Shown here: positions 5,407 through 61,263 of the stretch, in pieces
Numbering within the stretch: position 1 is the first letter of the stretch
How the letters are laid out: every line of letters begins with the position of its first letter
NCBI GenBank assembly: GCA_001179505.1
Contig: CDMY01000055.1
Span: 136,063-200,062, forward strand
Length of the DNA: 64,000 bases
Direction of reading: 5' to 3'
From: Vitrella brassicaformis CCMP3155
Taxonomy: Eukaryota; Protista; Chromerida
Program-made: the position numbers and the translations under genes
Notes under the pieces: model-generated
Told to the model about the DNA's origin: nothing
Seen by the model: only the letters and a program-made list of their open reading frames with translations
Databases searched by the model: none

Positions 5407-8144
5407 TTATCGGCATCGGGATGTGCAGCAGGCGCGCGCAGGGACTGCACACACAGATAGATCGGAAACGGCACAACAATCACTCACATCCTGTTGGTTG
5501 TGTGTTGGCAGTGCTTTGGCTGATCGACCTGGGGGGCGCTGGACCGGCTGGGCGGGAACTGGCTGTGTACACAAAGACATCATCCATGGAGACATACACT
5601 CATAAGAGCAAGGCAATGGCGATATGAGGACATGTGTCAGTGTGCCTCCCCCTTACCACAGCTGTGGCGACGAGCGGGGCGCCGGTGTAGCCGCACTGCT
5701 CGGGAGTCAACTTGTGCTCGTTCATCTAGCCCACACATACACACACACAGATACATGTCCATCATCCCTCTCGCCCGTGTCTCTCTCTTCTCTGTATGTC
5801 ATGTGCATCGCAGCGTACGATGTTGATCTGTTCCTGGTTGGGTGTCCATCCCGCCGGCGGCCCCTCGAGCTTCGTCTCGATGACGTCGCCCACCGGCTCG
5901 GGTTTGCCGGTCCACGTGTGGCCGTCGCGCATGTGTGTGGTGGGCGGTAGGGGGCCAAAGGCATCTGTTGGCCAGGGCTTGGCGTCCTTGAGCTGCTCCG
6001 GGAAGGCCGCTGGGATGGGCTCCTGGATGTGTTTGAACAGGTTGAGGTCAATGCCGTTCGTGGCGAATAGCTCGACCAACTGCATCTAGCTGATGCTCAC
6101 ACCTGACACCACACACCAGGGCACACACATCGCAACAACACAATGGACAGACAGAGACAAAGACACGACCATGTGAGAAGGTGCGGGCATGTGTACCAGG
6201 AGGTATGTCAATGTTGAGTGTGGCTTTGATGATTGGCGGGACGACCACGTGGGTGGGACTGGGAGGCAGCATCGTGGTCGTACGGTGGGGAATCACCTAC
6301 ACACACACATCAACACACAGACACTTGGGAGTCACCTGTGCTGTGTTGTGGTGTGTGTGTGTGTGTGTGCGCGCGCTGACAGACCGACCACGGGGTATTT
6401 GTTGTACTTGTACTCGTATACGGGCACCTCATAGGGCTTCTCAATGTCCTTGTACCTGCACACACACATTGCACACCGAGACGCCGGCCAGCCCATGTGT
6501 GGGGCCCTGGTTGTGGCCGTGTGTCTGGTGTAATGTGCTGACTTGACGACCTCGACCTCCCGGTCGACCACCACCTCTCTGTGAGAGGACACACACAGAC
6601 ACACACAAAGATTGATGGGATGGCAGGGGAAGTCTTATTGCATGCGGGGTGTGGTGACTGCATACTTCTCGACGACGACCTCCTTCCAGATCGGCACCAC
6701 CTCACCCGGTACAGGCACATGACGCACCTGCGAAACACACAACATCCACTCACACAACGAAATCATTGGCCCCGAGTGCGTGTGCCCGCCAATTGCCTGG
6801 CTGACAGACCTCTTCTTTGACGATGTACTTGGGCACTTCCTTGACGACCTCGACGGGCACGTCGACGTAGTGGGGCACGGGGACCTCCTGCACGCGCTCG
6901 ATGGTCTTGACCTCCACCTTGGGGACGTACTTGATGACCGGCACGTGGATCTGCACACATGGACACAAAGAGGGAGGGAGAGGGGATAAGGCATGCATTG
7001 ATGATGCCCTCCCTGTGTGTGTCTGTGGGTCGGTTACGTCGATGGGGACCGCCTTGGGGACCTCCTTGACCACCTCCACCACATGAGGCACCTGTGGGTC
7101 CAATCACAACGAAGGGCCGCAGGTGTGTGTGGGGATGGGGGGAGGGTGAGTGAACACTGCTATGCTGTGTTGGTTTACCTCGACGACTTTGTCTTTGTAT
7201 TCGACGACGGGGACCTCCTGGATGCGCTCGACCGTCTTGACCACCGTCTTGGGCACCACACGCTCCTGGACCAACAGCGGACACACACACAGAGAGGGAG
7301 GAGGGGCAGGAGAGACACGGATTAACGGACCGTGTCTCTCTCCATTCATCTGTGTGTGCGGCTTACGATGGTTTTGACTTCGACTTTGGGCACATATTTG
7401 TTGACCACCTGCACCTGTGGCACCTGAACTCTCACACCACACCCACATGGACCGTGATGGACGGCGTGCCTCCGTCACTCTCCATGTTTGTGCGTTGTGC
7501 GGTTGGCCTACCTCGACGACTCTGTCGACGTGCTGGACGACGGGCACCTCGACTTTGCGCTCGATCCATGAGTGGCTGAGCTCCGGCACCTGGCGGACGA
7601 CCTCATGGACCTCCGGCTTGGGGACGATCTTCTGCGTGTAGACGGGCACCTGACGCTCGGCCACGACGTCCTCGTAGTGCACATCGCTGTAGACGGGCAC
7701 CTCCACCTCAACCTATATTGGCAGACCGCACACAACACAAATCCTGCGGCCTGCTCATGAATGTCTTGCCCCTGTCTGTCCCCCTGCTGTTCACCGACTC
7801 ACTCGTCGAGTCCCGGTCTGCACTTGTCCCGCTGGTGTGGTTGTGCGACCCAGGCGGACCAGCTGGGACTGTGTCATCTCGCCCTCACCTCCTGCATGCA
7901 ATAAACACGACACATGACACATAACACAGAGCCCCTCAGCCCTCAGCCTCATTTCCCCCATGGACAGCCTTCCCTCCCGCGTGTGCCTTTGCCCCTTTCT
8001 CCCCTCCCCCGCCCTGTCATCTGCTTCACCTTGTTGCTGCTGTCCGAGTGCGTCCCGCACACTTACAGGCTGCCCCGCTGGGGGGCTGGCGGCCTGTGCG
8101 AAGGCGGCCGCCAGAGGGGAGCCGGGAGGGGCCGGGCCACTCAT
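5407..8144 (-). CDS. Alveolin / IMC1-like (articulin-type VPV-repeat) cortical cytoskeletal protein
   Basis: Many short exons with EVPV/VEKIVEVP-type repeats (VEVPVYSDVHYEDVVAERQVPV, VERIQEVPVVEYKDKVVEV, IERVQEVPVPHYVDVPVEVVKEVPK). The protein starts MSGPAPPGSP and ends PARACCTSRCR*, with terminal Cys typical of palmitoylated alveolins. Confidence 0.85.
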
Positions 8145-8490: not shown

Positions 8491-8678
8491 AGTGGCTCCA
8501 GATGGATGGGCTGTGTGTGTGTGTGGTGCATGTGTGCAGACTCGATTTCCTTTTTCGCTTATCACATCGCCGCTGGCTCGCCACCAGCTCACGTAAGGAG
8601 GCAAACAAGGCGCTCTAGACATACAGCCCGTCTGCATGTCACTCTGTGATGTTCATTTTGCAGACATCTCAGTCACTC

Positions 8679-9676
8679 ATGGCGTCAGACTCTGTTCCCT
8701 CTCTGTGGCCCTCTCACTCAAGACGGCCTCACACACACTCAATGACCCCACCAGGCGGCCGGCACTCGTCACACAGATCGACAAGCAGCCGCCCACAGAG
8801 ATCCCCAAAGGCGTCAAGCTGCCGGTCGTCCTGCAGCAGCGCATCGAGCGGGCCATGCAACCCGAGGACCTTCATGACCTTTTGGCCTTCGACATTCCTG
8901 ACGTGGCGGGGGCCCTCAAGACGGCCTACATGCTGGAGCGATGCAGCGGCCACTGGAAGGTGATGAAGGCCTTCATCGCCCTGGCCTTCATCTACCGGCT
9001 CACCCCCAATGCGACGCGGCCCCTCATGGTGTCGGCCGATTCGCTGCCCACCACTTTAGAGTTCGATGAGCTGCCCCTCACCATGGCCGCCTACAAAACA
9101 TTCGGCCACCTGCTCAGCCACCGGGGGACCAGCCTGGCGTTGCGGCGAGCTGCCAACGGTGCCTATCGGATCGGCGATCATTCGTTTCGTGTGGTGCCGC
9201 TGAGTGAGCTGCGGGCTGAGCACCCCTACCGCAGCGGATACAAGGATAGCGACCCCGCCATCCGCTGGGGCCATTATCTCTACCCATCATTCACGGCATT
9301 CATCACGCGAACGGTTCTGATACAGTGGTGTTACCAAAAGGGGGTGGTGAGGAAGCCACTGGGAACAGCTCGTGTCGGTCGTGACGACACTCGCTATCGG
9401 TCCCTGCTGACGGCACCGTCCATCGAGGGCTACAAGACCGTCGACTACATGTACACCGTACATGTCAGGGGACAGGAGGGCTACTACCGCCGTCGACTCA
9501 TCGTGCTCAAGGGGACGGGGGGGACCGACACGATCGTGGCCTTTCTGTGGGTGTCCGATGGCTGCATCAGCCTCTTCACGACTGAGGCGCCGACAAAGGG
9601 CAGACACGTTGCAACTGCGGCGGCCGCCCGCCCTCTGCTGGCCAGCTATGGGCTGGATCAGCGTATGCTGGGATAG
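8679..9676 (+). CDS. Family X copy 1 (uncharacterised lineage-expanded protein; core motifs LTP..PL, FDELP..AYKTFGHLL, YRIG, HPYR, SDP.IR, YPSFTAF, RYRSLL, LKGT, TTEAP)
   Basis: Intron-free ORF 8636-9676, homologous to 13035-14003, 23640-24837, 25738-26916 and 43158-44650. The true start is uncertain because the ATG at 8679 is out of frame with the core. Confidence 0.7.
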
Positions 9677-10485
9677 ATCAATTCGATGACGAAATACCGG
9701 TGAGGATGGATGGGGGGGAGGGAGGGGGGCTGTAGGTTGTGAGGGAGAGAGAGTAGGTATGACCGTCATCTCATTTCCTGTGTGCCGTGCTGCGTTGATT
9801 TCTGTAGGTGTCGCATTACTCTGTTGGCGTGACAGTGGGGCGGATTGCTCCAGGTGCCCGTAAGGACGGGTGGGTCTCACCATGAGGGAGGCCTGATGAA
9901 GCGGGGGTGGTAGACAAGGTGGTGCTGTGGGTCCGCAGTGACCGTAGCAACCCCGGCCGTGATGTAGGTCCCTCCCTCTCTCCCGTCTCGCTTTTATTCT
10001 CCCCGTGCGTGTGACAGCCGGTGGTGCGTGTTGCCAAGTCACCCCCTTTTCTTCCTCTCTGTCCACCTGTCTGCCTGCCCGGTGTGCGGGTGAGGTTGCG
10101 AGTCTTCCTTGCAGACACAGAGAGGCTTCGTCTGACTTGATTACATGGGCGTGCGAGTGAGGAAGGTGGTTTGGTGTGTCGTCGAGATGCCTGCCTGCAT
10201 AGAGGATAACTGTAGTCCCTATGATCATAAAACAACCTGTGTGTGTGTGTTTATATATGTGAATGCGTGAATTGTCAGACCGGTGTTGGTTGCACCTGCA
10301 TTGCGTGTGTGTGCTGCGCAGTCTGTGACTGATTTACAAGTGCTGATTGCCAGGGAGGTGGCGACACGAACAGTAACAAATACACTCATTGTGCTGTTCC
10401 ATCCCTCCATCCATCCATTCGTTCATTCGTCCGTCATCGACTGACTGACTGACTGAGTAATGCATCTCCCGCACAAAGTCACAAA

Positions 10486-11347
10486 TACATCCAGCGTCGC
10501 TGTGTTGTGAGTGACCGCCACGACTCGCTACGACGGCACTCGCATCATGCATCACGTTCCGCTACGTCATGAGGCGAGCCAGTATCATCATCCACACAAC
10601 ACCGTCCGTCTGTTTTGACGATGTGTCACGACAGACGGACGGACAGACAGACACACAGACACCCAGACAGAGAGACAGACAGACAGACAGACAGAGACAC
10701 GAACGCCGCCCTTACCAGGTATGAAAGCACGCGCATCAGGAATGCAGTCAGTCAGTCAGGTCATCCGGTCCGGCCCCCTTTAATTGTCCAACAAGAAGCC
10801 TGACGGCCCCGTATACACACACATGCACACACCCCCACCCCACCCCACCCCACCCTGTCTGCCGTCGACATGCGACGTCCATTCCATGCAATTCCCATCT
10901 ATCTACTGCTATCCATCCCATCCCTAATGACTGGACTGGGTGAGTGAGTTGTCCGGGCTGTGTGCTGCGTGCTGGTGTACGTGACATGTTTCGCCTACGT
11001 AGGTGCAGACACAGACACAGACACAGAGACAGACAGACCAGTAAGAAAAAGTTCATGCCATAAAGACCAGCACCAACACACATCCACACGCGCCAATGAA
11101 TGCCTAGAGGCCATCGATGAAACTCTCAGCCACGGCGACCTTCCTGCTGGCCACGGCCGCCAGGTTGCCCAGCACCCTCAGGCTGGCCCCTCCCCCCCGC
11201 GTGGCCATCACCTGGTCGCGAAGGTCGACCTCCATCTCGCCAATCCTGACTGTCGGCCGGTAGTGCTGCATGGCCTCGCTGATGGCACGCTGAAGGAACT
11301 CCTGGCCTTCATCGGTGGGCGACGAGACGAGGGTCATGTTGTAGCCC
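10486..11347 (+). repeat. 862-bp segment apparently identical to 17096-17957 (both abut N gaps)
   Basis: Constant offset of 6610; identical ORF translations (10615 vs 17225, 10748 vs 17358). Confidence 0.9.
11104..11347 (-). CDS. 3' fragment of the carboxylesterase gene (cut by gap)
   Basis: MTLVSSPTDEGQEFLQRAISEAMQHY...AESFIDGL*, identical to 17714-17957. Confidence 0.75.
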
Positions 11348-11647
11348 NNNNNNNNNNNNNNNNNNNNNNNNNNNNNNNNNNNNNNNNNNNNNNNNNNNNN
11401 NNNNNNNNNNNNNNNNNNNNNNNNNNNNNNNNNNNNNNNNNNNNNNNNNNNNNNNNNNNNNNNNNNNNNNNNNNNNNNNNNNNNNNNNNNNNNNNNNNNN
11501 NNNNNNNNNNNNNNNNNNNNNNNNNNNNNNNNNNNNNNNNNNNNNNNNNNNNNNNNNNNNNNNNNNNNNNNNNNNNNNNNNNNNNNNNNNNNNNNNNNNN
11601 NNNNNNNNNNNNNNNNNNNNNNNNNNNNNNNNNNNNNNNNNNNNNNN
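11348..11647. other. Assembly gap (300 N)
   Basis: Run of N. Confidence 1.
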
Positions 11648-12677
11648 GTGTCGGGGCCGGGGGGGGGGTGGGTGAGTGTGCTATGCTGTGTTGGTTAACC
11701 TCGACGACTTTGTCTTTGTATTCGACGACGGGGACCTCCTGGATGCGCTCGACCGTCTTGACCACCGTCTTGGGCACTACACGCTCCTACATCAACAGCA
11801 GAGACACACACAGAGAGGGAGGGCAGGAGAGACACGGATTAATGGGCCGTGTCTCTCTCCATTCCTTTGTGTGTGTGAGGCTTACGATGGTTTTGACTTC
11901 GACTTTGGGCACATACTTGTTGACCACCTGCACCTGTGGCACCTGATTTCTCACACCCACATGGACGGCGTGCCTCCGTCCGTCACTCTCCCTCTTTGTG
12001 TTTGTGCGTTGTGTGGCTGGCAAACCTCGACGACTCTGTCGACCTGCTGGATGACGGGCACCTCGACTTTGCGCTCGATCCAGGAGTGGCTGAGCTCCGG
12101 CACCTGGCGGACGACCTCGTGGACCTCGGGCTTGGGGACGATCTTCTGCGTGTACACGGGCACCTGACGCTCGGCCACGACGTCCTCGTAGTGCACATCG
12201 CTGTAGACGGGCACCTCCACCTCAACCTATATTGGCAGAACACACACAACACAATCCTGCGGCCTGCTCATGAATGTCTTGCCCTGTCCCCTTGTCCCCC
12301 TGCTGTTCACCGACTCACTCGTCGTGTGCCGGTCTGCACTTGTCCGGCTGGTGTGGTTGTGCGGCCCAGGCGGACCAGCTGGGACTGTGTCATCTCGCCC
12401 TCACCTCCTGCATGCGATAAACGCCACATAGGACGACATAACACAGAGCCCCTCAGCCCTCAGCCCCATTTCCACTTGATTTCCCCCACAAACAGCCCTT
12501 CCCTCGACGTGCGTGTGTCCTTGCCCCTTTCTCCCCTACCCCGCCCCTGTCGTCTGCTTCACCTTGTTGCTGCTGTCCGAGTGCGTCCCGCACACTGACA
12601 GGCTGCCCCGCTGGGGGGCTGGCGGCCTGGGCGAAGGCGGCAGCCAGAGGGGAGCCGGAGGGGGCCGGGCCACTCAT
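11648..12677 (-). CDS. Alveolin duplicate, 5' half (truncated by gap)
   Basis: MSGPAPSGSPLAAAFAQ... and EVPVYSDVHYEDVVAERQVPV exons are collinear with 7130-8144, with the same intron positions and SNP/indel differences. Confidence 0.85.
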
Positions 12678-13008
12678 GATGAAATCACGTGAGATGAATG
12701 AGGGGAGGGGCGCGGTGCGTTGACAGACGACGAGGGACGGCCGGAAGAGCCGTTTAAGCTCGCGTCACGCCCCTTGCGCAAGCAGTGCGGCATCATCGGT
12801 GGGGGGAGGAGGGTGAGCGAGGAAGGAAAGTGGTCTGATTCTGTCGTGTACATGTATGTCATGCCTGTCTTTCCATCTCCACAGATCTCGTGAGTCCTGT
12901 GTTCGACCAGCACACGTAGGGAGGGGAGGGAGGAGGCAAACAAGGCGCTCTCATACATCCCGTCTGCATGCTACTCTGTGTCGTTCGTTCTGCAGATATC
13001 ACTCACTG

Positions 13009-14003
13009 ATGGCGTCTGACTCCGTTCCCTCTCTGTGGGCCTCTCACTCACGACGGCCTCACACACACTCGATGACCCCACCAGGCGGCCGGCACTCGTC
13101 ACACAGATCGACAAGCAGCCGCCCACAGAGATCCCCAGAGGCGTCACCCTGCCGGTCGTCCTGCAGCAGCGCATCGAGCGGGCCATACATGAGGAGATCC
13201 TTCATGACCTCTTGGCCTTCGACATTCCTGACGTGGTCGGGGCCCTCAGGACGGCCCATGTGCTGAAGCGATGCAGCGGCCACTGGAAGATGATCAAGGC
13301 CTTCATCCCCCTGGTCTTCATCCACCAGCTCACCCCCAATGCGACGCGGCCCCTCATGCTGTCGGCCGATTCGCTGCCCACCACTTCAGCATTCGATGAG
13401 CTGCCCCTCACAATGACCGCCTACAAGACATTCGGCCACTTGCTCAGCCACCGGGGGACCAGCCTGGCGCTGCAGCGAGCTGACAACGGTGCCTATCGGA
13501 TCGGCGATCATTCGTTTCGTGTGGTGCCGCAGAGTGAGCTGCCGGCCGACCATCCCTACCGCGGCACATACAAGGAGAGCGACCCCGTCATCCGCTGGGG
13601 CCATCTTCTCTATCCATCATTCACGGCATTCATCAAGCGAACGGTTCTGATACAGTGGTGTTACCAAAAGTGGGTGGTGAGGAAGCCACTGGGAATAGCT
13701 CGTGTCGGTCGTGACGACACTCGCTATCGGTCCCTGCTGACGGCACCGTCCATCGAGGGCTACAAGACCGTCGACTACATCGATGAGGATCCATTCGCCC
13801 CGGGAGACGACGGCCGCCGACGATTTATCATTCTCAAGGGCACCGCAGCCAACGACACCACTGCGGTCCACCTGTGGCTGTTCGATGGCCACATCCGCCT
13901 CTGGACGACCGAGGCGCCGACAAAGGGCAGACACGTTGCAACTGTGGCGGCCGCCCGCCCTCTGCTGGGCAGCTATGGGCTGGATCAGCGTATGCTGGGA
14001 TAG
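13009..14003 (+). CDS. Family X copy 2
   Basis: Intron-free ORF 13035-14003, highly similar to copy 1 except for a divergent patch at ~13781-13910. The ATG at 13009 is out of frame with the core. Confidence 0.7.
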
Positions 14004-16083: not shown

Positions 16084-16795
16084 CTAGAGGCCATCGATGT
16101 AACTCTTAGCCACGGCGACCTTCCTGCTGGCGACGGCCGCCAGGTTGCCCAGCACCCTCAGGCCGGCCCCTCCCCCCCGCGTGGCCATCACCTGCTCGCG
16201 AAGGTCGACTTCCATCTCGCCAATCCTCACTGTCGGCCGGTAGTGCTGCATGGCCTCGCTGATGGCACGCTGAAGGAACTCCTGGCCTTCATCGGTGGGC
16301 GACGAGACGAGGGTCATGTTGTAGCCCATGGCCGCCCAGGTCAGGTCCGTGGGGTCGCTCTGCGCCACGACGTGCATGCTCGAGGCGCTCACACACGAGT
16401 AGCGGGGCACCACCGAGGAAAACAGAGACAGCGCCCTCGCGGCGTGGATCTGACAACAACAGCAAGCAGTGAGTGACACGCAGAGTGCAACCCCGTGCCA
16501 TGTTGTGGTGGGGTGTTGTGTGCACTACTCGCTGGTTTACCTACCGGGTCATCTGCGAGCCACTCTTCCCAGCTGCCTCCGCCCAGCGATGGCATATCCA
16601 CATTGGCCGTCGTGACGCACACACTGCCGCTGGGGCACTGAAGCGACCCGCACTCGCCGCCCTCACTCTCGCCATAGCGCGCCTGCCTGGTTCTGTCGGC
16701 GTATCCTTTCCATGAGACATCGTACTTTGGAATGATGCTGTCCCAGAAGCCGCACTCGTCGTTCATGTAGCCGGCCTCGCTGAGGGCACGGCCAG
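16084..16795 (-). CDS. 3' fragment of a second carboxylesterase copy (cut by gap)
   Basis: Collinear with 17714-18425 (offset 1630) with several SNPs (AKSYIDGL vs AESFIDGL). Confidence 0.75.
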
Positions 16796-17095
16796 NNNNN
16801 NNNNNNNNNNNNNNNNNNNNNNNNNNNNNNNNNNNNNNNNNNNNNNNNNNNNNNNNNNNNNNNNNNNNNNNNNNNNNNNNNNNNNNNNNNNNNNNNNNNN
16901 NNNNNNNNNNNNNNNNNNNNNNNNNNNNNNNNNNNNNNNNNNNNNNNNNNNNNNNNNNNNNNNNNNNNNNNNNNNNNNNNNNNNNNNNNNNNNNNNNNNN
17001 NNNNNNNNNNNNNNNNNNNNNNNNNNNNNNNNNNNNNNNNNNNNNNNNNNNNNNNNNNNNNNNNNNNNNNNNNNNNNNNNNNNNNNNNNNNNNNN
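16796..17095. other. Assembly gap (300 N)
   Basis: Run of N. Confidence 1.
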
Positions 17096-17713
17096 TACAT
17101 CCAGCGTCGCTGTGTTGTGAGTGACCGCCACGACTCGCTACGACGGCACTCGCATCATGCATCACGTTCCGCTACGTCATGAGGCGAGCCAGTATCATCA
17201 TCCACACAACACCGTCCGTCTGTTTTGACGATGTGTCACGACAGACGGACGGACAGACAGACACACAGACACCCAGACAGAGAGACAGACAGACAGACAG
17301 ACAGAGACACGAACGCCGCCCTTACCAGGTATGAAAGCACGCGCATCAGGAATGCAGTCAGTCAGTCAGGTCATCCGGTCCGGCCCCCTTTAATTGTCCA
17401 ACAAGAAGCCTGACGGCCCCGTATACACACACATGCACACACCCCCACCCCACCCCACCCCACCCTGTCTGCCGTCGACATGCGACGTCCATTCCATGCA
17501 ATTCCCATCTATCTACTGCTATCCATCCCATCCCTAATGACTGGACTGGGTGAGTGAGTTGTCCGGGCTGTGTGCTGCGTGCTGGTGTACGTGACATGTT
17601 TCGCCTACGTAGGTGCAGACACAGACACAGACACAGAGACAGACAGACCAGTAAGAAAAAGTTCATGCCATAAAGACCAGCACCAACACACATCCACACG
17701 CGCCAATGAATGC

Positions 17714-20700
17714 CTAGAGGCCATCGATGAAACTCTCAGCCACGGCGACCTTCCTGCTGGCCACGGCCGCCAGGTTGCCCAGCACCCTCAGGCTGGCCCC
17801 TCCCCCCCGCGTGGCCATCACCTGGTCGCGAAGGTCGACCTCCATCTCGCCAATCCTGACTGTCGGCCGGTAGTGCTGCATGGCCTCGCTGATGGCACGC
17901 TGAAGGAACTCCTGGCCTTCATCGGTGGGCGACGAGACGAGGGTCATGTTGTAGCCCATGGCCGCCCAGGTCAGGTCCGTGGGGTCGCTCTGCGCCACGA
18001 CGTGCATGCTCGAGGCGCTCACACACGAGTAGCGGGGCACCACCGAGGAAAACAGAGACAGCGCCCTCGCGGCGTGGATCTGACAACAACAGCAAGCAGT
18101 GAGTGACACGCAGAGTGCAACCCCGTGCCATGTTGTGGTGGGGTGTTGTGTGCACTACTCGCTGGTTTACCTACCGGGTCATCTGCGAGCCACTCTTCCC
18201 AGCTGCCTCCGCCCAGCGATGGCATATCCACATTGGCCGTCGTGACGCACACACTGCCGCTGGGGCACTGAAGCGACCCGCACTCGCCGCCCTCACTCTC
18301 GCCATAGCGCGCCTGCCTGGTTCTGTCGGCGTATCCTTTCCATGAGACATCGTACTTTGGAATGATGCTGTCCCAGAAGCCGCACTCGTCGTTCATGTAG
18401 CCGGCCTCGCTGAGGGCACGGCCAGCCGGTGCGTCGTCGCTGAGGATGGACAGCTTCATATACAGCCTCTCGTCGCGAGTGTAGGGGGGCCAGGGGGGCA
18501 GGGAGGAGCCGGCAGCAGAATCACCATCACCAGCACCATCTGGCACGCCAGTGTTGGCAAAGTTTCTCCAGTACTGGTGGACTGTCTTGACGGCCTCCTC
18601 CTCGGCAGACGTGAAAGCGAAACCTGAACCGGACACACCATTCATCCCATCCATCCATTCATGTACCCTCCCGTCAGCTTCTTCTGTGTTGGTTGCACTG
18701 CTGACCCTCTGGCATTCTGCGTGCGCTTTGCAGCAGCCATGGCTGGTCCTCCAGGTGGCATCTGATCTCATCCGTGCCGCAGAAGCGGTTGAGGGAGTGG
18801 AAATACGATCCGGGTGCACTCTTGGCGGTGAATTTTTCACTCTCGGTGTACGACCACCTGGGCACACAAAGACACACACAAAGACACAACACACACTGCA
18901 TTGCCTTTTCCGTATCTCTCTCTCTGTGCTTCTACCATGCCCTCCCACCCTGATTCGTATGAGGCGAGGTAACACGTGCCCGTCACATTGGCGCACAGCT
19001 GCCTCGTCGAGCACGAGAATTCCGAATGGCCGAAGGCACTGCTGAAGGAGGATGCCGTGTCGGGCCTGTCGGGCGTCAGGCCGATCGTGGCGGGTTCACC
19101 CACACCATCAAGAGGGTACAGCTCGAGGAACTCGTCCTGGGTTCACACAGAAGACGAGAGAGGGACAGCATAGGATGCCAAATTTGGAAGAAAATTCGGC
19201 GTGTGGTTGTTTCTCTCGTACCGCCCTGGCGCCGAAGAGCCCTTTGATGGTTGCCATCCATGTGACCGGATTGAAGACGACCTGGGTGAGCATGTCGGCG
19301 AAGTCGCGCGCAAAGAAATTGATGGCTTGGCGGATGATCACCGTCCCTTCGTGCGGTGTCGACGACAACATCAGCGGCACATCAGTGTTGTACTCGCCCT
19401 GCACTCACACAGGACAGACACATAGCGCCAATCACCGGCCGCATGCAGCGATGGTTGGACGGGCACGTCCGCCTATTCTCACACACCGTGACAAGAGGGT
19501 CATAGCAGTTGTTTGAGAGGACCTCCCCGTCTTCCACCAGCCGCCACGGCGCCAGTATAAAGAAATCCTCAAGAATGAGGTACATATTGCCCAGCAGATT
19601 CGCCGCAAGAAGGTCCTTCACAGGTGCGGTCTTGATGCACTCGATGTAGGCGTCCAGGTCCCTCTCGGCCTTGTGGACGGGACCGCACGAGGGCGTCAGG
19701 GCGGTCAGGGCAAAGTTGCTCTGCGCCGTGGCGAGCTGACAACAGAAGAGAGAGAGGCAATTGCGTCAGCCTGGTCTGTGGTCCATTCCCTTTGTGAGCT
19801 CACCTCGAGGGATCTCCCGCTTTGGCAGCAGTCCTGCGATACTGCAATCACCTTCTTGAACAGCCGTCCTGCGCTCTCTGACGCGAGATGGCAGGCGGCA
19901 CTCACAGCACCCGCACTGAAGCCCACTAGTGTGACGTCACGCGAACCGCCGAAGTGCTGCACACAGACACACATTGTGTAGGCCGGTCTCTCTCGTCTGC
20001 TCTGTCTGGTGTGGCGTGGTGTGCGTGTGTGCGTTGGTCACGTGTATGTATTTCTGTATCCACTCAAGGGCCACGCGCTGGTCCAGAAAGCCCAGATTCC
20101 TCGGCAGATAATCGGTGACGATGCCGCCGAAGATACCCAATCGATAATTTAAGCCCACGACCACAAGACCTGACCATACCAGCACAGACACAAACAAGGC
20201 GATATCAGCTGAGCAAGTGAAAATCTCTCTCTCCCCCTCTCTCTCCCTCTCTCTCGCGCCCTCACCTGTCCTTTGCGCCAGTGCCGCCCCATCAGTGAAT
20301 GCCGCCCCTGATGTGCCGCCGTCCCAACCCCCCCCGTGGATCAGCGCCAACACATTTCTCTTTTCGCCTCGCTCTCGCACGCCTTTGGGCACCCACACGT
20401 GGAGGTACAGACACTGCTCCGCCAGCAAGCCACTCTCCGACAAGCAGAACTGCGGCGACCCAACGACCTGCTTGCACGCGGACGGACAGGCGGGCCCCTT
20501 GTTCGTGGCATCGATGTGGCCGCCTCCCAGAGGGATGAGCGTCGGCTTCTCAAATCTTGGCGCGTCTCCGAACTGGATGCCCAGGAAGGCCTCTGTGTCG
20601 GTATCTGCCTGGTCGATGCCCCGGATCTCTGTACCTGGTATTGCACGTGTCACGCACAGCCACAAAGTGTCACTCAGAAGTGTGTGTGGCACTGCTTTTG

Positions 20701-20810
20701 TGAAGTGTGTGCCCACCATCCGGTAGCTCGATGACGACCGCTTCTCCGCAGCTGGCGAACACGGCGAGCAACAGCCAGACACAGACACCTCCCCTCGGCA
20801 CACAGACCAT
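17714..20810 (-). CDS. Secreted type-B carboxylesterase/cholinesterase-family alpha/beta hydrolase with C-terminal extension
   Basis: Signal peptide (MVCVPRGGVCVWLLLAVFASCGEA); motifs AFLGIQF, EQCLYLHVWVP, LIHGGGW, NYRLG, NLGFLDQRVALEWIQ, nucleophile GFSAG, VPLMLSSTPHEG (Glu), RCHLEDQPWL (His), WPPY and CGFWD. Confidence 0.9.
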
Positions 20811-21034
20811 CTCCCCTTGGCATCTCAATGATCTCATCAGCGCGGTACGCGAGATTTGCGTTCGCTGAGGCGCCTGATGAGCGTTAAACCAACGAGAGGG
20901 GGTAGAGCTCTCGGTAGCTTGGCCCCTATCTCGGCGGTTATCGTTACCGCTCCCCGCCGTTCCCCCTTCAGCTGTTCCCGAGCTCGCGGTAAACTTGAAG
21001 AATCCCCCGCGGGTCCGCAATATTACCCTTCCCC

Positions 21035-23639: not shown

Positions 23640-25110
23640 CTATCCCAGCACTGTCCTCTCGAGCCCATGTGTCGCCAGCAGCCGTCTGGCGACCCGCACG
23701 GCCGTGGGTTACCGCTCGATGGCCGTCCTGCCCTCTGTCGGTGCCTCGGTCGTCCAAAGGATGATGTTGCCATCAACCATATCTAGGTAGGCCACAGTAG
23801 CATCTGTCGCCTTGCTGCCCTTGAGCACGATGATCCGCCCGCGGCTGTCGTCCCTCTGCGCCACACGCTCAGCCATGATGCCGACTGTCTTGTGGCCGTG
23901 GATGGGCTCCGTCAGCAGGGACGTAGCGGCTGTCAGCACGACCGAGACGACCGACAGCCACCAGCTTCCACTCCACCCTCCCTTGACCCCCCCAGTGCTT
24001 CAGGACCATCGCCGTGAGGAATGCCGTGAAGGATGGGTAGAGATAGATCCAATGGCGAATGACGGGATCGCTCTCCTTGTATGTGCGACGATAGGGGTGG
24101 TTGTTGGGCAAATCGGATAGGGGGACTGTCACGAAGTCGAGATCGCCGATCTCATAGCGCCGTCTCGTCACCCCACCCCCACCATCACCATGCTGCCCCC
24201 CCTGATCGCTGCCCGCTGTACCGGCCTCGGCACTCGCGCCGTCAGCTCCATCCTGCTCATCCACCCGCTCCAGCGTTAGGCTCTCCCCTTTGTAGCTGAG
24301 CAAGTGGCCGAATGTCCTGTAAATGGCGAGGGCGGCCGGCATCTGCAGGAAGTCGCCCCTGCTGGCCAGGTGGTCCCCCATCCGCTTGGGCGACAGCCGC
24401 AGGGGCAGTGTCTTGATGAGCTTGTAGTTGCGCGCCAGGTGGATGAAGTCGGTCATCTGCACCCACACCGCCCCGCCCCGCTCGAGCGCATAGGCGCATT
24501 TGCTGTAGTAGCCGAACATTGACCGATACACGTCGACGAGGCCGGTCAAATGGTTGCTGTCGAGGAAGCCATCGATGCGCTTGAGCATGAAGGCCTCGTT
24601 GATGAGCTGTGTGCCGAAGAGGGTGTTGGCTGCCCTCGCCGGGCTGATGGCCACGTCGACAGGGAGATAGCCCACGATACCGTCACAGTACACATCGGCG
24701 GGCAGCCGATTGGCCGTCACGTCCACGGCATTGTCGCCATCAGCAGCAGCTGTGGTGTCTGGCTGAGATGGGGGAGGGGGCGGGGCGGCAGAGATGTGGT
24801 GGGCGATGGTCTGAATGGCAGCCGAGAGGGTCGACACGCTCGACTTGACAGATGACCAATCCTGTGCGACGATGGGAACCTAGCGGCAGACGGTTTCGCC
24901 CACACAGAAGAGGCAAATCCATGTATTGAGCCATTTCTTTCTCTGTGTGACCCACCTGGTCAGCGGCAATGGATGTCATTACTAAGGGCTCAACATCCGA
25001 CACCTCGGTCGCCACCTGCCACACGAGTCGAGTCTGTCAGTTTGGTCAGGTCGCATGTCAAACTTGTGTGTGCCATTCACCTGCTCCATGAGCGACTGTA
25101 TGGCCGCCAG
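23640..25110 (-). pseudogene. Family X copy 3, pseudogene (F-box-like motif, frameshift and premature stop)
   Basis: RLPADVYCDGIVGYLPVDVAISPARAAN (F-box-like) followed by the core. There is a frameshift at ~23925 (CGCTACGTCCCTG vs family CGCTATCGGTCCCTG) and an in-frame TAA in IER*PTAV. The N-terminal exons are homologous to those of copy 7; the 5' end is approximate. Confidence 0.8.
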
Positions 25111-27529: not shown

Positions 27530-27880
27530 ATCAGCAGGGGACAGCAACTGGGAAGCGCTCGATGTGCGTGCTGCCCTCGATCGGTGCCCCGGTCGTGTCA
27601 AGTTCGATGCCGCCACTGCCGACCCACAGGTAGGCCGCAATGGTGTCGGTGCCCTTAAGGATGATTCGCCGGCGACCGTCGTCTCCCTGGCCCCCCGACC
27701 GGGCCTATCTGGCCCAGTGATTGAGCCCGGAGGGCGATGGAAGAAGGCCCCAGATCTCCCTGCTAACAGCGAATGGTTCGCCAGCCAGGCAGGCAGCCAG
27801 CCAGCCGTTCGTTCTTTTGCAGCGGCACAAGCTCAGAAGGAAGGCCAGGCCTGCACACTCACATGATGACAACGAACACG
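27530..27880 (-). pseudogene. Family X copy 5, degenerate C-terminal fragment
   Basis: Translates to GDDGRRRIILKGTDTIAAYLWVGSGGIELDTTGAPIEGSTHIERFPVAV, with weaker upstream similarity (AFLLSLCRC) and an in-frame stop. Confidence 0.65.
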
Positions 27881-41058: not shown

Positions 41059-41720
41059 TCAGAGGCCTGAGACGGCCTCCAGTATGGGCACCACGCTGCG
41101 AGTGAAAGCTCCCTGATGCTCGTTGTTGACAGTGTCCACCACCGCCAGTCTGCTACCCTGCGAGTTGCCGAAACCGACGTGGCCGTACACATAGCCGAGG
41201 CCGATCCCATCCATCTGCAGCTCCATCGTGCCCAGACCTGCAGGCATTTGATACACCCACACACACACACCACAAGCCTGGGTGCCAGTGAGAGCTTCTC
41301 TCTCTGTGTGTGTCAGTGGTCGTTTTACCGTAGTAGATCCAATCAGCATTGCTGAAGGAGGAAGCTGCCTGCCCTGCGTCGAGGGCGTGTGCCAGTGCGT
41401 CGGGGGGGATGATCCGGCCCTCATGAAGCCGCGGATGAAGATGCTCGTGTCATGCACCGCTCCAGCACGTAGGCCGTCTTTAGGGCCTCCGCCACGTCAG
41501 GAATGTCGAAGGCCAAGAGGTCATGAAGACCTTCCTCATGCATGGCCCGCTCGACGCGCTGCTGCAGGACGGCCGGCAGCTTGACGCCCTTTGGGATCTC
41601 TGTGGGCGGCTGCTTGTCGATCTGTGTTTGGAATGCCGGCCGCTTGGTGGGGTCATCGAGCATGTGAGAGGCCTTGTTGAGTGAGAGGGCCCACAGAGAG
41701 GGAACAGAGCCGGACGCCAT
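41059..41720 (-). pseudogene. Family X copy 6: 5' fragment fused to an unrelated spliced 3' gene fragment
   Basis: MASGSVPSLWALSLNKASHMLDDPTKRPAFQTQIDKQPP...AYVLERC, then homology stops at ~41452. An unrelated frame follows (HDTSIFIRGFMRAG...GSTT|GLGTMELQMDGIGLGYVYGHVGF...SGL*) containing its own intron. Confidence 0.7.
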
Positions 41721-42869
41721 GAGTGAGTGAGATGTCTGCACAACGAACGACACAGAGTGGAATGCAGACGATGTGTGAATGCGCCTCGTTTGTCTCCTTA
41801 CATGTGCTGGTAACGGCCGTGCAGGGCTGTCTACGGGAAGCGATACAGGTGACATGCCAACTCGAAACCAAAAACCCAAGCTGCACACACGCACGCGTCG
41901 ATGAGAACAGATGCTTTTGACGCGTGTGCAGTGGTCTTTCGCCCACCCGACGTAAGTCAGTCAGTGGCGATGGGAGTGCCGATGCAGAGGCCGGGAACAC
42001 ACAACACGAGATCTGCAGTCAACATCCCTACAGACCGACAGACAGGCGGGTGCGGAGCAGAGCAGATCAGCTGCCATCTTCATTGCTCAGTGTCCTCTCA
42101 CCGCGGGCAGACGGACAGACGGGCCAGACAAACGATCAGCCAGAACAAGCGAGTGACTGAGTGAGTGAGGCCAGGGAGTGGGCGAGTCAATTGCCCGACA
42201 CGAGTCGCAGCACCCATCGCCAGGCGACCTGGAGAGGTCAGCTAACCCCCAAGACCGCATCCTTACATCCAACGTGGAGTTTGCGGTGGGCACACATGTC
42301 GATGGACAGATGAAGAAGATGAACAGATGCATCATGGGTGGCTATACCTGCGAAGGGTCGTTGGTTTGTGTGCGTTGCGTGTCGACAGTGGTTGTCGACT
42401 GCTATGGCGCCAAACCTGAATCGAGTGACACGACAGACAGACAGACAGACAGACGGCAGCGCGTGAGGAAAACAGCGCCTGCCTGCCTGTGCCGTTTGGG
42501 TGTATGAGTGTGTGCGTGTACCTTTTGAGTGCGGTGTATTCCGCACCATGCAGGCATATTTGCTCCGGATCTGTGCGCCAACTCGGGCGGCGCTGGTCGG
42601 CAGCGTCCTTGACACCCTGCCTCTCCTGCCCAACCCCATCAATCAACTGTTGTTGTGTCTTCCCTGTGTTGGCCCTCGCTCATTGCACTCACCTTCCTTT
42701 CCTCGACAGTCCCACTCCACTCATCCAACACCTCCCATTGGACCGCCAGGTCTCAAAATGCGAGAACATACACTGAACTGAACGCACACCCACGCAGTCA
42801 GAATGAGTGTGTCGTGTGAGAGTGCCGTGTTCGATGCCCACCTTGCTGCCGTAGCCCAGAAGAGAGAGC

Positions 42870-43157: not shown

Positions 43158-45068
43158 CTATCGGAGCACTGTCCTCTCGAGCCCACATTTGGCCAGCACT
43201 CGTCTTGCGGCATTCACAGCAACGGCGTAGCGCTCGATGTCTGTGTTGCCGTCTGTCGGCGCCTCGGTCGTGTAGAGGCGGATGCGGCCATAGCCTATCG
43301 CCCGGTAGGCAGCAATGGTGTCGTCGGCTGCGGTGCCCTTGAGGATGATAAATCGTCGGCGCCCGTCATCTAACGGGACGAATGTATGCTCAGCCATGTA
43401 ATCGATGGTCTTGAAGCCATCGATGGTCGGTGCCGTGAGCAGGGACCGATAGCGAGTGTCACCAGGACCGACATAAGTATCAGTCACCAGCTTCTTCTCC
43501 ACCCCCTCTTGGTCGTACCACCGCTTCAGGACCGTCTCCTCGATGAAGGCCGTGAATAATGGGTAGAGGCACTCCCCACAGCGGATGACGGGATCGCTCT
43601 CGTCGTATGTGCTGCGGTAGGGATGGTTGGGGGGCAGATCGGACAGGGGGACGGTCGTGAAGTACTGAGTGCCGATCCTATAGCGCTGCCTCGCCACGCC
43701 ACTACCATGACCATCACCCTGCTGCCCTCCTGACCCATCGCCCCCTGCCCCCTCCTGCTCCTGCTGACCCGCGGCATCGTTGTCTCCTTCGTCCTGCTCG
43801 CTCCCATCGCCCATGGCATCGTCGCCGATATCACTGTCACTGTCACTGTCGCTGTCACTGTCACTGTCACTGTCGCCATCCTCCTCCATCTCCTCCTCCA
43901 CCCGATCCAATGCCAGGCTGGTCCCTTTGTGGTTGAGCAAGTGGCCGAATGTCTTGTAGACGGCCACGGTGAGGGGCAGCTCATCGAAGGCCATCTTGCT
44001 GCCCAGCTGCTCGGCCATCCTGTCTGCTGACAGCCGCAGGGGCAGTGCCTCGATGAGCTTGTGATTGTGCGCCAGGTGGATGAAGTCGGTCATCTGCCGC
44101 CACACCGCCCCGCCTCGCTCGAGTGCATAGGCGGACGCCGACAGATAGCGAAACCGCCGGATGCGGTCCGCTGGCGTGGCGGCATCGCTGGTCGGCTGTG
44201 GGTGTGTCGGGGGGCCACCGGGGAGGTCGGTGTCTGCTGCCGTGGGTGTGGGTGTGGGTGTGGCTGTGGCTGTGGGTGGGGTAGGACGCTCGACATCGAT
44301 GAGTCCGGTGAGTGAGTGTTTCTTGAGGTCCTGGTCGATGCGCTTGAGCATGAAGGCCTCATCGACGAGCTGGCTGCCGTGTGTCTTGCTGGTCGGGCGG
44401 GCCGAGCAGACGGCCTCACACACAGACAGCATCGGGTAGATGTCCCCACGCCACACGTCGGCCGACAGGTCGTCGCCCAAGTGTCTGGGTGGCGGCGGCT
44501 TAGCCCAGCCGATCGGCCGGCAGGTGCCCTTGACGCCGTCAGCAATCTCACGCAGACCTTCGGCAGCCGACGAGAGAGCCGACAACACGCCAGGCCACTT
44601 CTGGGCGAGAAATGGCGTCTGCAGGACAGACACAGACACAGACACACAGTGGGAGAGTGTGCTGATGGCCTCATTGTGTGTTTGTGTGTGGTTGACTTGG
44701 GCTGCGACTGTCGTGTTGAAGAGCTCCTGCACATCGGCAGCCTCGCGAGTGGCCTGACAGACACGCAAACAGCCGACGGCAACACAGACAGTGAGAGCCC
44801 ACTGGACGGATGGCGTCACGACACTGTGAACGTGTGGGTACCTGTTCTATGTGTGAGTGAAGTGACGCGATGCGCTCCTCCAGTCGAGCCATACCCTCAG
44901 CGATGGACTGAAACACAACAGACAGACAGACAGACAGAGTGATGTGACCACGAGTGCTCTTCTGTCAGTCAGTTGCCTCACCGATTTGCTGTCAGATGCG
45001 GTCATTTCCTCTCCTCCCTGTGTGCGGGGCCGTTTGGGCGGCGCGCCGCCCTCGTCACTCATCGACAT
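43158..45068 (-). CDS. Family X copy 7, apparently intact; NLS-like leader, F-box-like motif, acidic (DS)n loop
   Basis: MSMSDEGGAPPKRPRT plus short exons, then a long exon with DLSADVWRGDIYPMLSVCEAVCSARPTSK and the full core to GLERTVLR*. Confidence 0.8.
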
Positions 45069-60664: not shown

Positions 60665-61263
60665 TTCCACACACACACACACACACATACACATATCTCC
60701 TTATCGGTCATTTTGTGTTGACGCCCTGGCTTGCCATCGTTTTAATCTGCACCTCCCGGCCGAACCACACCTGCTCTGCCTCTTCATGCTTGCTCGTGCT
60801 GCGCTGCGCTGTGCTGTGCTGTGCTCTGCTGTGCTGTGCTGTCTGCTCGTCCTCGTGCCTGCTTCATGCTGCGTATTGGTCACCCTACACCACACACACA
60901 CAGACACAGACACACAGACACACAGAATTGCATGATCTGTGATGTGCCGTGCCTTCTCTTTATTCAAGCCACTCACTCACCTTCATGCTGTTCCATGATG
61001 GGATGCTTCACGTATGGACACACCTCCCCATTCTCCTTCAACAGCGCTGTCACCTGTGGGGGTCGTGCATCGCGCTCAGCTCGCTGGGCGCCTTACTTGT
61101 GGAAAAGGGTAGCATTGCGGGGGGTGGAGAGGAGTTTACGGCGAGCTCAAGGATATCAGCTCGCGTTCTCGAAAGACCCTGCCCAGACCCCTCGTTGCTT
61201 TGACGCTCATTAGGCACCTCAGCGAACGCAGATCTCGCGAACCGCGCTGATGAGATCGTTGAG

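What the first reader, a model, noticed from the sequence alone, without database searches (positions are those of the whole stretch)
9451..13910. Sharply bounded swapped patch between Family X copies 1 and 2 (gene-conversion-like diversification)
Copies 1 and 2 differ at only 3 of 56 aa before the patch and 2 of 32 aa after it. Inside it they are very different: MYTVHVRGQEGYYRRRLIVLKGTGGTDTIVAFLWVSDGCISLF (9451-9583) vs IDEDPFAPGDDGRRRFIILKGTAANDTTAVHLWLFDGHIRLW (13781-13910). In copy 2, nt 13815-13860 match the distant, otherwise divergent copy 7 (43316-43361, reverse strand) at 44 of 46 nt. The best-preserved part of the remnant at 27.5-27.7k also covers this segment. Inference: paralogs exchange a C-terminal cassette, with pseudogene fragments as possible donors, as in antigenic-variation or immune gene families. 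Which copy was converted cannot be told from this window.
Basis: partly seen in the sequence, partly recalled or inferred. Interest (0 to 1): 0.78.

Follow-up and report, generated by a model that had tools for sequence, protein, structure and literature searches.

The report
Foreign patch in tandem Vitrella paralog
Two neighbouring, nearly identical copies of a gene from a large family known only in the alga Vitrella brassicaformis differ sharply in one 130-base stretch, most likely because copy 1 received that stretch from an unknown relative by gene conversion; it looks like a single event, not an organised variation system.

Summary
Copy 1 (8636-9676) and copy 2 (13035-14003) are 92-94% identical in the coding sequence. 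They are only 62% identical in 9449-9577 versus 13779-13904 (Fisher p 1e-14).

The direction can now be told. Copy 2's patch is typical of the family, at 76-86% to 12 other loci. Copy 1's patch is an orphan. It has no other DNA match in the 72.7 Mb Vitrella brassicaformis genome, and its best partial match is 79% over 96 bases.

Synonymous divergence in the alignable part of the patch is about ten times that of the flanks (0.58 against 0.04-0.05), and the patch and flank trees disagree. This fits import from a divergent paralog that is missing from the assembly. It does not fit selection on point changes.

The donor clues do not hold. The 44/46 match lies in the subfamily's best-conserved block, and the 27.5k remnant is no donor. 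Among 5,345 paralog pairs, none shows a transferred patch. Both copies share a frameshift near the start and evolve at dN/dS of about 1.1, so they may be pseudogenes.

The short-read, gapped tandem array cannot be fully trusted. The finding is ordinary ectopic gene conversion in an undescribed family found only in Vitrella.

The parts
8636..9676 (+). Family copy 1: a 346-codon open frame from an upstream ATG. The canonical start (MASDSVPSLW) is out of frame.
8700..8712 (+). Site of the 1-base deletion in the G/C run just after the canonical start in copy 1. It shifts the frame relative to intact paralogs.
9365..9448 (+). 84-base block identical in copies 1 and 2 and 86-93% conserved in 13 other paralogs (a 14th matches only in part, 82%). 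It is the likely hidden upstream end of the tract and is longer than the assembler's k of 75.
9449..9487 (+). Patch part A in copy 1 (13 codons, a hairpin loop). It has no DNA homology to any paralog and is unique in the genome at up to 3 mismatches.
9488..9577 (+). Patch part B in copy 1 (30 codons, beta strands). It is family-like but closest to other paralogs (79% to C141) rather than to copy 2 (72%). dS against copy 2 is 0.58.
13035..14003 (+). Family copy 2: a 322-codon open frame from GTG only. The public gene model bridges the frameshift with an intron.
13030..13045 (+). The same frameshift site in copy 2. It differs from copy 1 there by one substitution, which fits a deletion that predates the duplication.
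13779..13904 (+). Patch in copy 2. It is family-typical, at 76-86% DNA identity to 12 other loci.
11348..11647 (.). Assembly gap between the two tandem units, in or beside the second IMCp gene. It does not touch either family gene.
10486..11347 (.). 862 bases abutting gap 1 that are 100% identical to 17096-17957 abutting gap 2. This is a sign of a collapsed or mis-scaffolded array.
43316..43361 (-). The block in copy 7 that matches copy 2 at 44/46. It is the conserved core (RRRFIILKGTAA.DT), not donor evidence.
27540..27692 (-). Pseudogene fragment of 51 aa, running from the loop end to 25 aa past the patch, with two in-frame deletions. It is not a donor of either patch.

Best explanation
A short ectopic (interlocus) gene-conversion tract, or an equivalent templated repair event, replaced about 130 bases of copy 1. 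The true length could reach about 240 bases if the invariant edges are counted. The source was a divergent member of the same family that is not in the current assembly, because it was lost or never assembled.

Shown:
- The two 4.3 kb tandem units, each holding a family gene and an IMCp/alveolin gene, are 88-94% identical throughout except in the patch.
- Copy 2 keeps the family-typical patch, and copy 1's patch is the derived one.
- The patch still encodes the family's invariant residues and keeps the reading frame.

Inferred:
- The tract ends lie in the two nucleotide-conserved blocks that flank the patch: 84 bases upstream and about 34 bases downstream. Diverged paralogs can pair there. This also explains why the borders look so sharp.
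- Both copies share an early frameshift and evolve at dN/dS of about 1.1. The event is therefore probably a neutral by-product of recombination in a clustered family, not programmed diversification.
For: - Divergence shows a sharp discontinuity (Fisher p 1e-14).
- In the alignable part of the patch, dS is 0.58 against 0.05 and 0.04 in the flanks, with dN/dS 0.56. The silent sites are old too.
- Of 27 differences in part B, 25 fall on columns that vary in the family (p 1e-4). Copy 1's base is seen in another paralog at 20 of the 27.
- Part B is 79% identical to C141 and 78% to C55:91k, but only 72% to its twin.
- The flank tree joins copies 1 and 2 at 99/98 with path length 0.057. In the patch tree, copy 1 sits alone on a 0.57 branch and copy 2 pairs with another paralog. 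The AU test rejects a copy 1 + copy 2 clade at p 0.0285.
- Copy 2's patch matches 12 other loci at 76-86%, and copy 1's matches none.
- The flanking blocks are conserved at the nucleotide level across paralogs.
- Downstream of the patch, copy-1-specific bases begin after 34 bases, which is less than the k of 75. A simple k-mer chimera with a distant paralog therefore cannot explain the join.
Against: - No donor exists in the assembly. The best DNA match is 79% over 96 bases, the best protein match is 66-68% over 34-41 aa, and the first 39 bases match nothing.
- No independent sequence carries the patch. Records of the window's own genome may have been hidden from the metagenome scans.
- The AU p value is modest, and copy 1's long branch makes its placement unsafe.
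- The locus is a gapped short-read tandem array with exact duplicate contig ends.
- Public transcript-like proteins of this family are clear chimeras, so mis-joins happen in this family.
Confidence: 0.55

Rival explanations
1. Assembly artefact. The array holds more units than were assembled, and copy 1 as printed is a composite. The patch may belong to a hidden unit, or gap-closing may have placed it.
For: - The assembly used Velvet at k=75, then SSPACE, GapFiller, IMAGE and ICORN (PMC4501334).
- The 84 bases upstream of the patch are an exact repeat longer than k.
- Two N gaps flank the array, with 862 bases repeated exactly at their edges.
- The end of the contig is an inverted 92-98% copy of 16453-20899.
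- JGI and MMETSP proteins of this family are exact mosaics of 2-5 genome paralogs from different contigs.
Against: - Patch 1 has no other home in the assembly, and no dangling contig ends in the 84-base block.
- The downstream join is covered by copy-specific k-mers.
- A swap between tandem units would move the patch but would not remove the mosaic. Some unit of this array would still carry a divergent patch between array-type flanks.
Confidence: 0.17
2. Old divergence kept as an island. The two copies are older than they look. Repeated conversion between the neighbours has homogenised everything except the patch, which selection keeps different.
For: - Part A, the loop, is the most variable segment family-wide. 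Its mean amino-acid identity is 0.32, against 0.45-0.54 elsewhere.
- The other two close pairs also show patches somewhat less alike than their flanks: 0.79 vs 0.90 and 0.81 vs 0.89.
Against: - The non-coding parts of the unit are 88-90% identical. The patch (62%, dS 0.58) is far more diverged than the duplication itself.
- Copy 1's part B is nearer to other paralogs than to copy 2.
- dN/dS of about 1.15 and the shared frameshift argue against selection maintaining anything here.
Confidence: 0.15
3. Local burst of mutation or error-prone repair within copy 1, with no donor.
For: - Part A matches nothing in the genome.
- Part A starts with a short palindrome or direct repeat (TACATGT ... TACATGT at 9446-9466).
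- Part B holds a run of C-to-G changes that creates a G-rich stretch.
Against: - Changes in part B fall on family-variable columns (25/27) and mostly on states used by other paralogs (20/27).
- The frame, the invariant residues R287 and G293, and a confident fold are all kept.
- This would need about 45 changes plus two codon-length indels in 129 bases, against about 3% change per lineage in the flanks.
Confidence: 0.1

Closest known systems
Ectopic (interlocus) gene conversion in multigene families, specifically the 'outer-sequence fragment' class of Sawyer's GENECONV method (from my own knowledge)
   Same: A short tract with sharp borders inside otherwise near-identical paralogs. Silent-site divergence is raised in the tract, the patch and flank trees disagree, and no source is present in the alignment.
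   Different: The donor is unidentified. This is a single event, in genes that may be pseudogenes, in a short-read assembly.
Segmental conversion systems of antigenic variation (Trypanosoma brucei VSG mosaics, Neisseria pilE/pilS, Plasmodium var; from my own knowledge)
   Same: A large clustered family with pseudogene fragments. Nucleotide blocks conserved across paralogs border a variable segment.
   Different: There is no archive-to-expression-site layout. No recurrent transfers appear among 5,345 pairs. The organism is a free-living alga, and the two copies carry a frameshift and evolve neutrally.
SUKH (SMI1/KNR4) superfamily, including FBXO3 and bacterial immunity proteins such as YobK
   Same: The middle domain model (pLDDT 92) aligns to FBXO3 (Z 5.5, 123 residues), 2icg (5.3), 2prv YobK (5.0), 2pag (4.2), Knr4 (3.7) and Syd (3.5). 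The protein-language-model neighbours are all SMI1/KNR4 clusters, with score 0.84. Two distant Vitrella relatives are named F-box proteins, as FBXO3 is.
   Different: All Z scores are below the level that excludes a common arrangement. Foldseek finds nothing. There is no Pfam or PDB sequence match even at E of 10. This is a lead only.
TBP-like fold (beta-alpha-beta4-alpha), as in phosphoglucomutase domain 4
   Same: The C-terminal domain (about 235-346) has that order of elements. It aligns to PGM domain 4 at Z 6.8 (82 residues, rmsd 3.1) and to archaeal TBP at Z 5.0. The patch covers most of the four-stranded meander.
   Different: The Z scores are weak, there is no sequence similarity, and no function can be inferred.

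Membership tests
Ectopic gene-conversion tract | Abrupt change of divergence between two paralogs at both borders | tested here: met
   Identity runs 92-94%, then 62%, then 94%. Fisher p is 1e-14.
Ectopic gene-conversion tract | Silent-site divergence raised inside the tract, meaning a different coalescence and not selection | tested here: met
   dS is 0.58 in part B against 0.05 and 0.04 in the flanks.
Ectopic gene-conversion tract | Patch and flank phylogenies disagree | tested here: met
   Flanks give 99/98 support for copy 1 + copy 2. The patch AU test rejects that clade at p 0.0285. The result is weak because of a long branch.
Ectopic gene-conversion tract | An identifiable donor with a near-identical tract | tested here: not met
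   There is no DNA match in the genome. The best is 79% over 96 bases and 66-68% at the protein level. Part A is unique.
Programmed cassette or antigenic-variation-like system | Recurrent transfer of the same segment among family members | tested here: not met
   Across 105 C-termini and 5,345 pairs, no pair has a patch much more alike than its flanks. The largest excess is +0.17, at 0.57 flank identity.
Programmed cassette or antigenic-variation-like system | Silent donor fragments that match the expressed variants | tested here: not met
   The remnant 27540-27692 is 71% identical to patch 1 and 69-83% to patch 2, and it is not patch-shaped.
Programmed cassette or antigenic-variation-like system | Conserved recombination blocks bordering the variable segment | tested here: inconclusive
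   The 84-base upstream block is 86-93% conserved in 13 paralogs and there is a conserved downstream block. Both encode conserved protein motifs, so ordinary constraint may explain them.
Programmed cassette or antigenic-variation-like system | Intact, selected recipient gene | tested here: not met
   Both copies share a 1-base deletion after the canonical start. dN/dS outside the patch is 1.15.
SUKH (SMI1/KNR4) superfamily | Sequence profile match to SMI1_KNR4 or SUKH Pfam models | tested here: not met
   None of 27 members hits at E up to 10. A profile search of PDB sequences gives nothing.
SUKH (SMI1/KNR4) superfamily | SUKH fold | tested here: inconclusive
   VIA-align gives Z of 3.5-5.5 to six SUKH structures, each covering most of the domain. 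Foldseek gives none.

The most novel reading that the evidence does not exclude
The family comprises at least 138 loci and 178 clusters at 50% identity, with every named member from Vitrella. It could be a rapidly evolving recognition repertoire built from a SUKH-like domain plus a TBP-like domain, with some members tied to F-box or BTB ubiquitin-ligase adaptors. Segmental conversion would reshuffle the beta-sheet face of the C-terminal domain, giving an immune-like or conflict-driven system in a free-living relative of apicomplexans. Patch 1 would then be the visible trace of an exchange with a pool of unassembled variants.
Probability: 0.1. Interest if true: 0.65.

Novelty: new member of a known kind. 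Interest (0 to 1): 0.3.

Why it matters
On its own, this is a textbook-style conversion tract in one pair of tandem paralogs that may be decaying. It matters mainly as a caution about the short-read Vitrella assembly.

The family is the more useful lead. It is a very large, clustered, fast-evolving gene family found only in Vitrella, with paralog dN/dS of about 0.5-1.0. It has no Pfam family and no clear known fold. If its weak links to SUKH and F-box adaptors hold, it would parallel the expanded ubiquitin-adaptor families of nematodes and plants.

Tried and rejected
- **Donor searches.** All were negative. I ran DNA and protein searches of the whole genome with each patch and a 36-mer pattern with 3 mismatches. 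I also ran sensitive blastn against 112 fetched loci, a word search of 5.8 billion proteins with the patch region, and two exact-pattern scans of metagenome contigs.
- **Copy 7 as donor.** Rejected. The match sits in a conserved block with graded matches in other paralogs.
- **Remnant as donor.** Rejected.
- **GENECONV-like run test on 14 subfamily members.** The significant runs all sit in the conserved 55-base block upstream of the patch. They reflect rate heterogeneity, not transfers.
- **Homogenisation of the gene block relative to non-coding flanks.** Dropped once global alignments gave 88-90% for the non-coding blocks.
- **Fold assignment.** Foldseek on the full model and on the middle domain found nothing.
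- **F-box in copies 1 and 2.** No Pfam support.
Full report
**Source and family**

The window is scaffold C55:136063-200062 of a 72,700,666-base, 1064-scaffold genome. Protein hits name it Vitrella brassicaformis CCMP3155. The size and scaffold count match the published assembly (PMC4501334).

It has no Pfam family, even at E of 10, and no sequence relative in the PDB. A profile search of 1.84 billion representative proteins returns 178 hits. The eight of ten sampled distant hits that carry a name are all from Vitrella. The family is therefore known only from this lineage and appears undescribed. Two literature searches found nothing on it.

**The observation**

Copy 1 (8636-9676) and copy 2 (13035-14003) sit in two units of a roughly 4.3 kb tandem duplication. 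Each unit also carries an IMCp/alveolin gene on the minus strand (PF12314). Non-coding blocks of the units are 88-90% identical and the coding sequence is 92-94% identical. The stretch 9449-9577 versus 13779-13904 is only 62% identical.

The last 84 bases before the patch are identical. After the patch, identity returns at once. Differences are concentrated in the patch with Fisher p 1e-14.

**The assembly gap**

The N run 11348-11647 lies between the two family genes, in or beside the second IMCp gene. It does not touch either patch. Continuity across it cannot be established.

The 862 bases left of this gap are 100% identical to the 862 bases right of the next gap, at 16796-17095. In addition, 16453-20899 is repeated in inverted form at the contig end. 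The assembly was made from short reads with Velvet at k=75, followed by scaffolding and two gap-closing programs. The number and order of units is therefore unsafe.

The mosaic itself is harder to explain away. Upstream, the 84-base exact repeat exceeds k, so the two copies could have swapped upstream halves. Downstream, copy-specific bases start after 34 bases. A chimera with a distant paralog would need that paralog to be copy-1-like anyway.

**Which copy changed**

Copy 2's patch has 12 other DNA matches in the genome at 76-86%. In a 17-member codon alignment it is 66-85% identical to the other LKGT-type paralogs, like its flanks at 61-82%. Copy 1's patch has no other DNA match and is 59-70% identical to every other LKGT-type paralog. 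Copy 1 is the derived copy.

**Import or in-place change**

The patch has two parts.

- **Part A (9449-9487)** is a hairpin loop. It aligns to nothing, is unique in the genome at up to 3 mismatches, and shares only 4 of 16 differing bases with any paralog.
- **Part B (9488-9577)** is family-like. Of its 27 differences from copy 2, 25 fall on columns that vary in the family (p 1e-4). At 20 of them, copy 1 uses a base seen in another paralog. Part B is 79% identical to the C141 paralog and 78% to C55:91k, but only 72% to copy 2.

Synonymous divergence between the twins is 0.58 in part B, against 0.05 and 0.04 in the flanks, with dN/dS 0.56. Selection on amino-acid changes would not raise dS tenfold.

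The trees agree with this. The flanks join the twins at 99/98 support with path length 0.057. In the patch tree, copy 1 is a lone 0.57 branch, copy 2 pairs with another paralog, and the AU test rejects the twin clade at p 0.0285.

The patch keeps the frame and the family's invariant residues, and it is modelled confidently. The best reading is import of a segment from a divergent family member.

**The missing donor**

No locus in the assembly is close enough to be the donor. Given 6-12% divergence between the units, a surviving donor should be at least about 85% identical. The best found is 79% over 96 bases. The assembly holds 931,689 N and this array is gapped, so the donor may be unassembled or lost. 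No independent sequence carries patch 1, although records of this genome may be hidden from the metagenome scan.

**Why the borders look sharp**

The 84 bases before the patch are 86-93% conserved in 13 other paralogs, with a 14th matching only in part. The block after it, encoding LWTTEAPT, is also conserved at the nucleotide level. A tract ending anywhere in these blocks leaves no trace, so the true tract may be up to about 240 bases long. These blocks are natural pairing sites for diverged paralogs. They also encode conserved motifs, so they need not be special recombination signals.

The 44/46 match between copy 2 and copy 7 lies in the subfamily's best-conserved block. Other paralogs score 42, 40, 39, 39 and 38 there, and copy 1 scores only 33, the lowest of the 16 best-matching sequences. 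About 0.8 such windows are expected by chance at the 80% background.

The remnant at 27540-27692 is a 51 aa fragment with two in-frame deletions. It starts inside the loop and runs 25 aa past the patch. It is 71% identical to patch 1 and 69-83% to patch 2. It is not a donor and is not shaped like a cassette.

**Is cassette exchange a family habit?**

I extracted 105 distinct paralog C-termini from 112 loci and compared patch and flank identity in 5,345 pairs.

- Patch and flank identities correlate at r 0.82.
- No pair has a patch much more alike than its flanks. The largest excess is +0.17, at 0.57 flank identity.
- Only this pair combines flanks of at least 0.94 with a patch of 0.65.
- The two other close pairs show mildly lower patch identity: 0.79 vs 0.90 and 0.81 vs 0.89.
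- Family-wide, only the loop (part A) is hypervariable, with mean amino-acid identity 0.32 against 0.45-0.54 elsewhere. Part B is average at 0.48.

There is thus no sign of a recurrent exchange system in the assembled genome.

**State of the two genes**

Intact paralogs start with MASDSVPSLWALSLK. Relative to them, both copies lack one base in the G/C run just after codon 10, and they differ there by a single substitution. This fits a frameshift that predates the duplication.

Copy 1 keeps a long frame from an upstream ATG, with a novel 24 aa start. Copy 2 has only a GTG, and the public model bridges the site with an intron. Outside the patch, dS is 0.063 and dN is 0.073, a ratio of 1.15. Both may be pseudogenes or remodelled genes, which weakens any claim of adaptive diversification.

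**What the protein looks like**

An AlphaFold2 model of copy 1 (pLDDT 87, pTM 0.84) shows three regions:

- an N-terminal helical part;
- a middle alpha/beta domain;
- a C-terminal beta-alpha-beta4-alpha domain.

The patch (residues 272-314) covers most of the four-stranded meander, with part A at the first hairpin. Foldseek finds no match. VIA-align gives weak matches for the C-terminal domain to TBP-like folds: PGM domain 4 at Z 6.8 and TBP at Z 5.0.

For the middle domain modelled alone (pLDDT 92), VIA-align gives weak matches to six SUKH-superfamily structures. These are FBXO3 at 5.5, 2icg at 5.3, YobK at 5.0, 2pag at 4.2, Knr4 at 3.7 and Syd at 3.5. The protein atlas independently lists only SMI1/KNR4 clusters, at a score of 0.84 that is below its trust level.

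Among distant Vitrella relatives, two are named F-box proteins. One has a BTB domain and one carries a ubiquitin. Others carry TPR or HMG domains, and some of these fusions may be gene-model errors. This makes a SUKH-like adaptor role a lead, not a finding.

**A warning from public proteins**

The JGI proteins P0004, P0005, P0008 and P0010 and the MMETSP transcript P0011 are exact mosaics of two to five genome paralogs lying on different scaffolds. They are most simply read as de Bruijn assembly chimeras that switch at shared conserved blocks. They show that this family is prone to mis-joins. They should not be read as evidence of recombination.

**Verdict**

The most likely cause is one short ectopic conversion from an unsampled paralog (0.55). 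The rivals are assembly composite (0.17), an old island among homogenised flanks (0.15), and local mutation (0.10). The analogy with antigenic variation is not supported. Interest is modest, and the undescribed Vitrella-only family is the more valuable by-product.

Noticed in passing
window 7104-7706 (-) and 11951-12220 (-): Each tandem unit also carries an alveolin/inner-membrane-complex gene (Pfam IMCp, E 6e-12 and 1e-8). The second copy runs into the assembly gap at 11348-11647.
   Followed up: partly
window 10486-11347 and 17096-17957: These 862 bases are 100% identical, and each abuts an N gap. The scaffolder or gap closer probably placed one contig end twice, or a tandem unit is collapsed.
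   Followed up: partly
window 16453-20899 vs 61188-64000: An inverted duplicate of 92-98% identity links the region after copy 2 with the very end of the scaffold. It includes a carboxylesterase-like gene (19937-20803, PF00135, E 2e-28).
   Followed up: no
proteins P0004, P0005, P0008, P0010 (JGI) and P0011 (MMETSP): Public proteins of this family are exact mosaics of 2-5 CCMP3155 paralogs from different scaffolds. They are probably transcript-assembly chimeras that switch at conserved blocks.
   Followed up: partly
window 8700-8712 and 13030-13045: Both tandem copies lack one base in the G/C run after the canonical start codon, which is a shared frameshift. The public model of copy 2 hides it with an intron.
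   Followed up: yes
window 9446-9466: The copy 1 patch begins with a short repeat or palindrome (TACATGT, six bases, TACATGT). Its meaning is unknown.
   Followed up: no
family-wide (loci L001-L112): Paralog comparisons give dN/dS of about 0.5-1.0 in the C-terminal half. The family splits into an 'ILKGT' type and a 'VSGFRP' type. Many members lie in clusters on C55, C240, C350, C377 and C274.
   Followed up: partly
window 23643-24501 (-), 41454-41757 (-): Further family pieces lie in the window. One is a copy split by a frameshift. The other is an N-terminal-only fragment 86% identical in DNA to copies 1 and 2.
   Followed up: no
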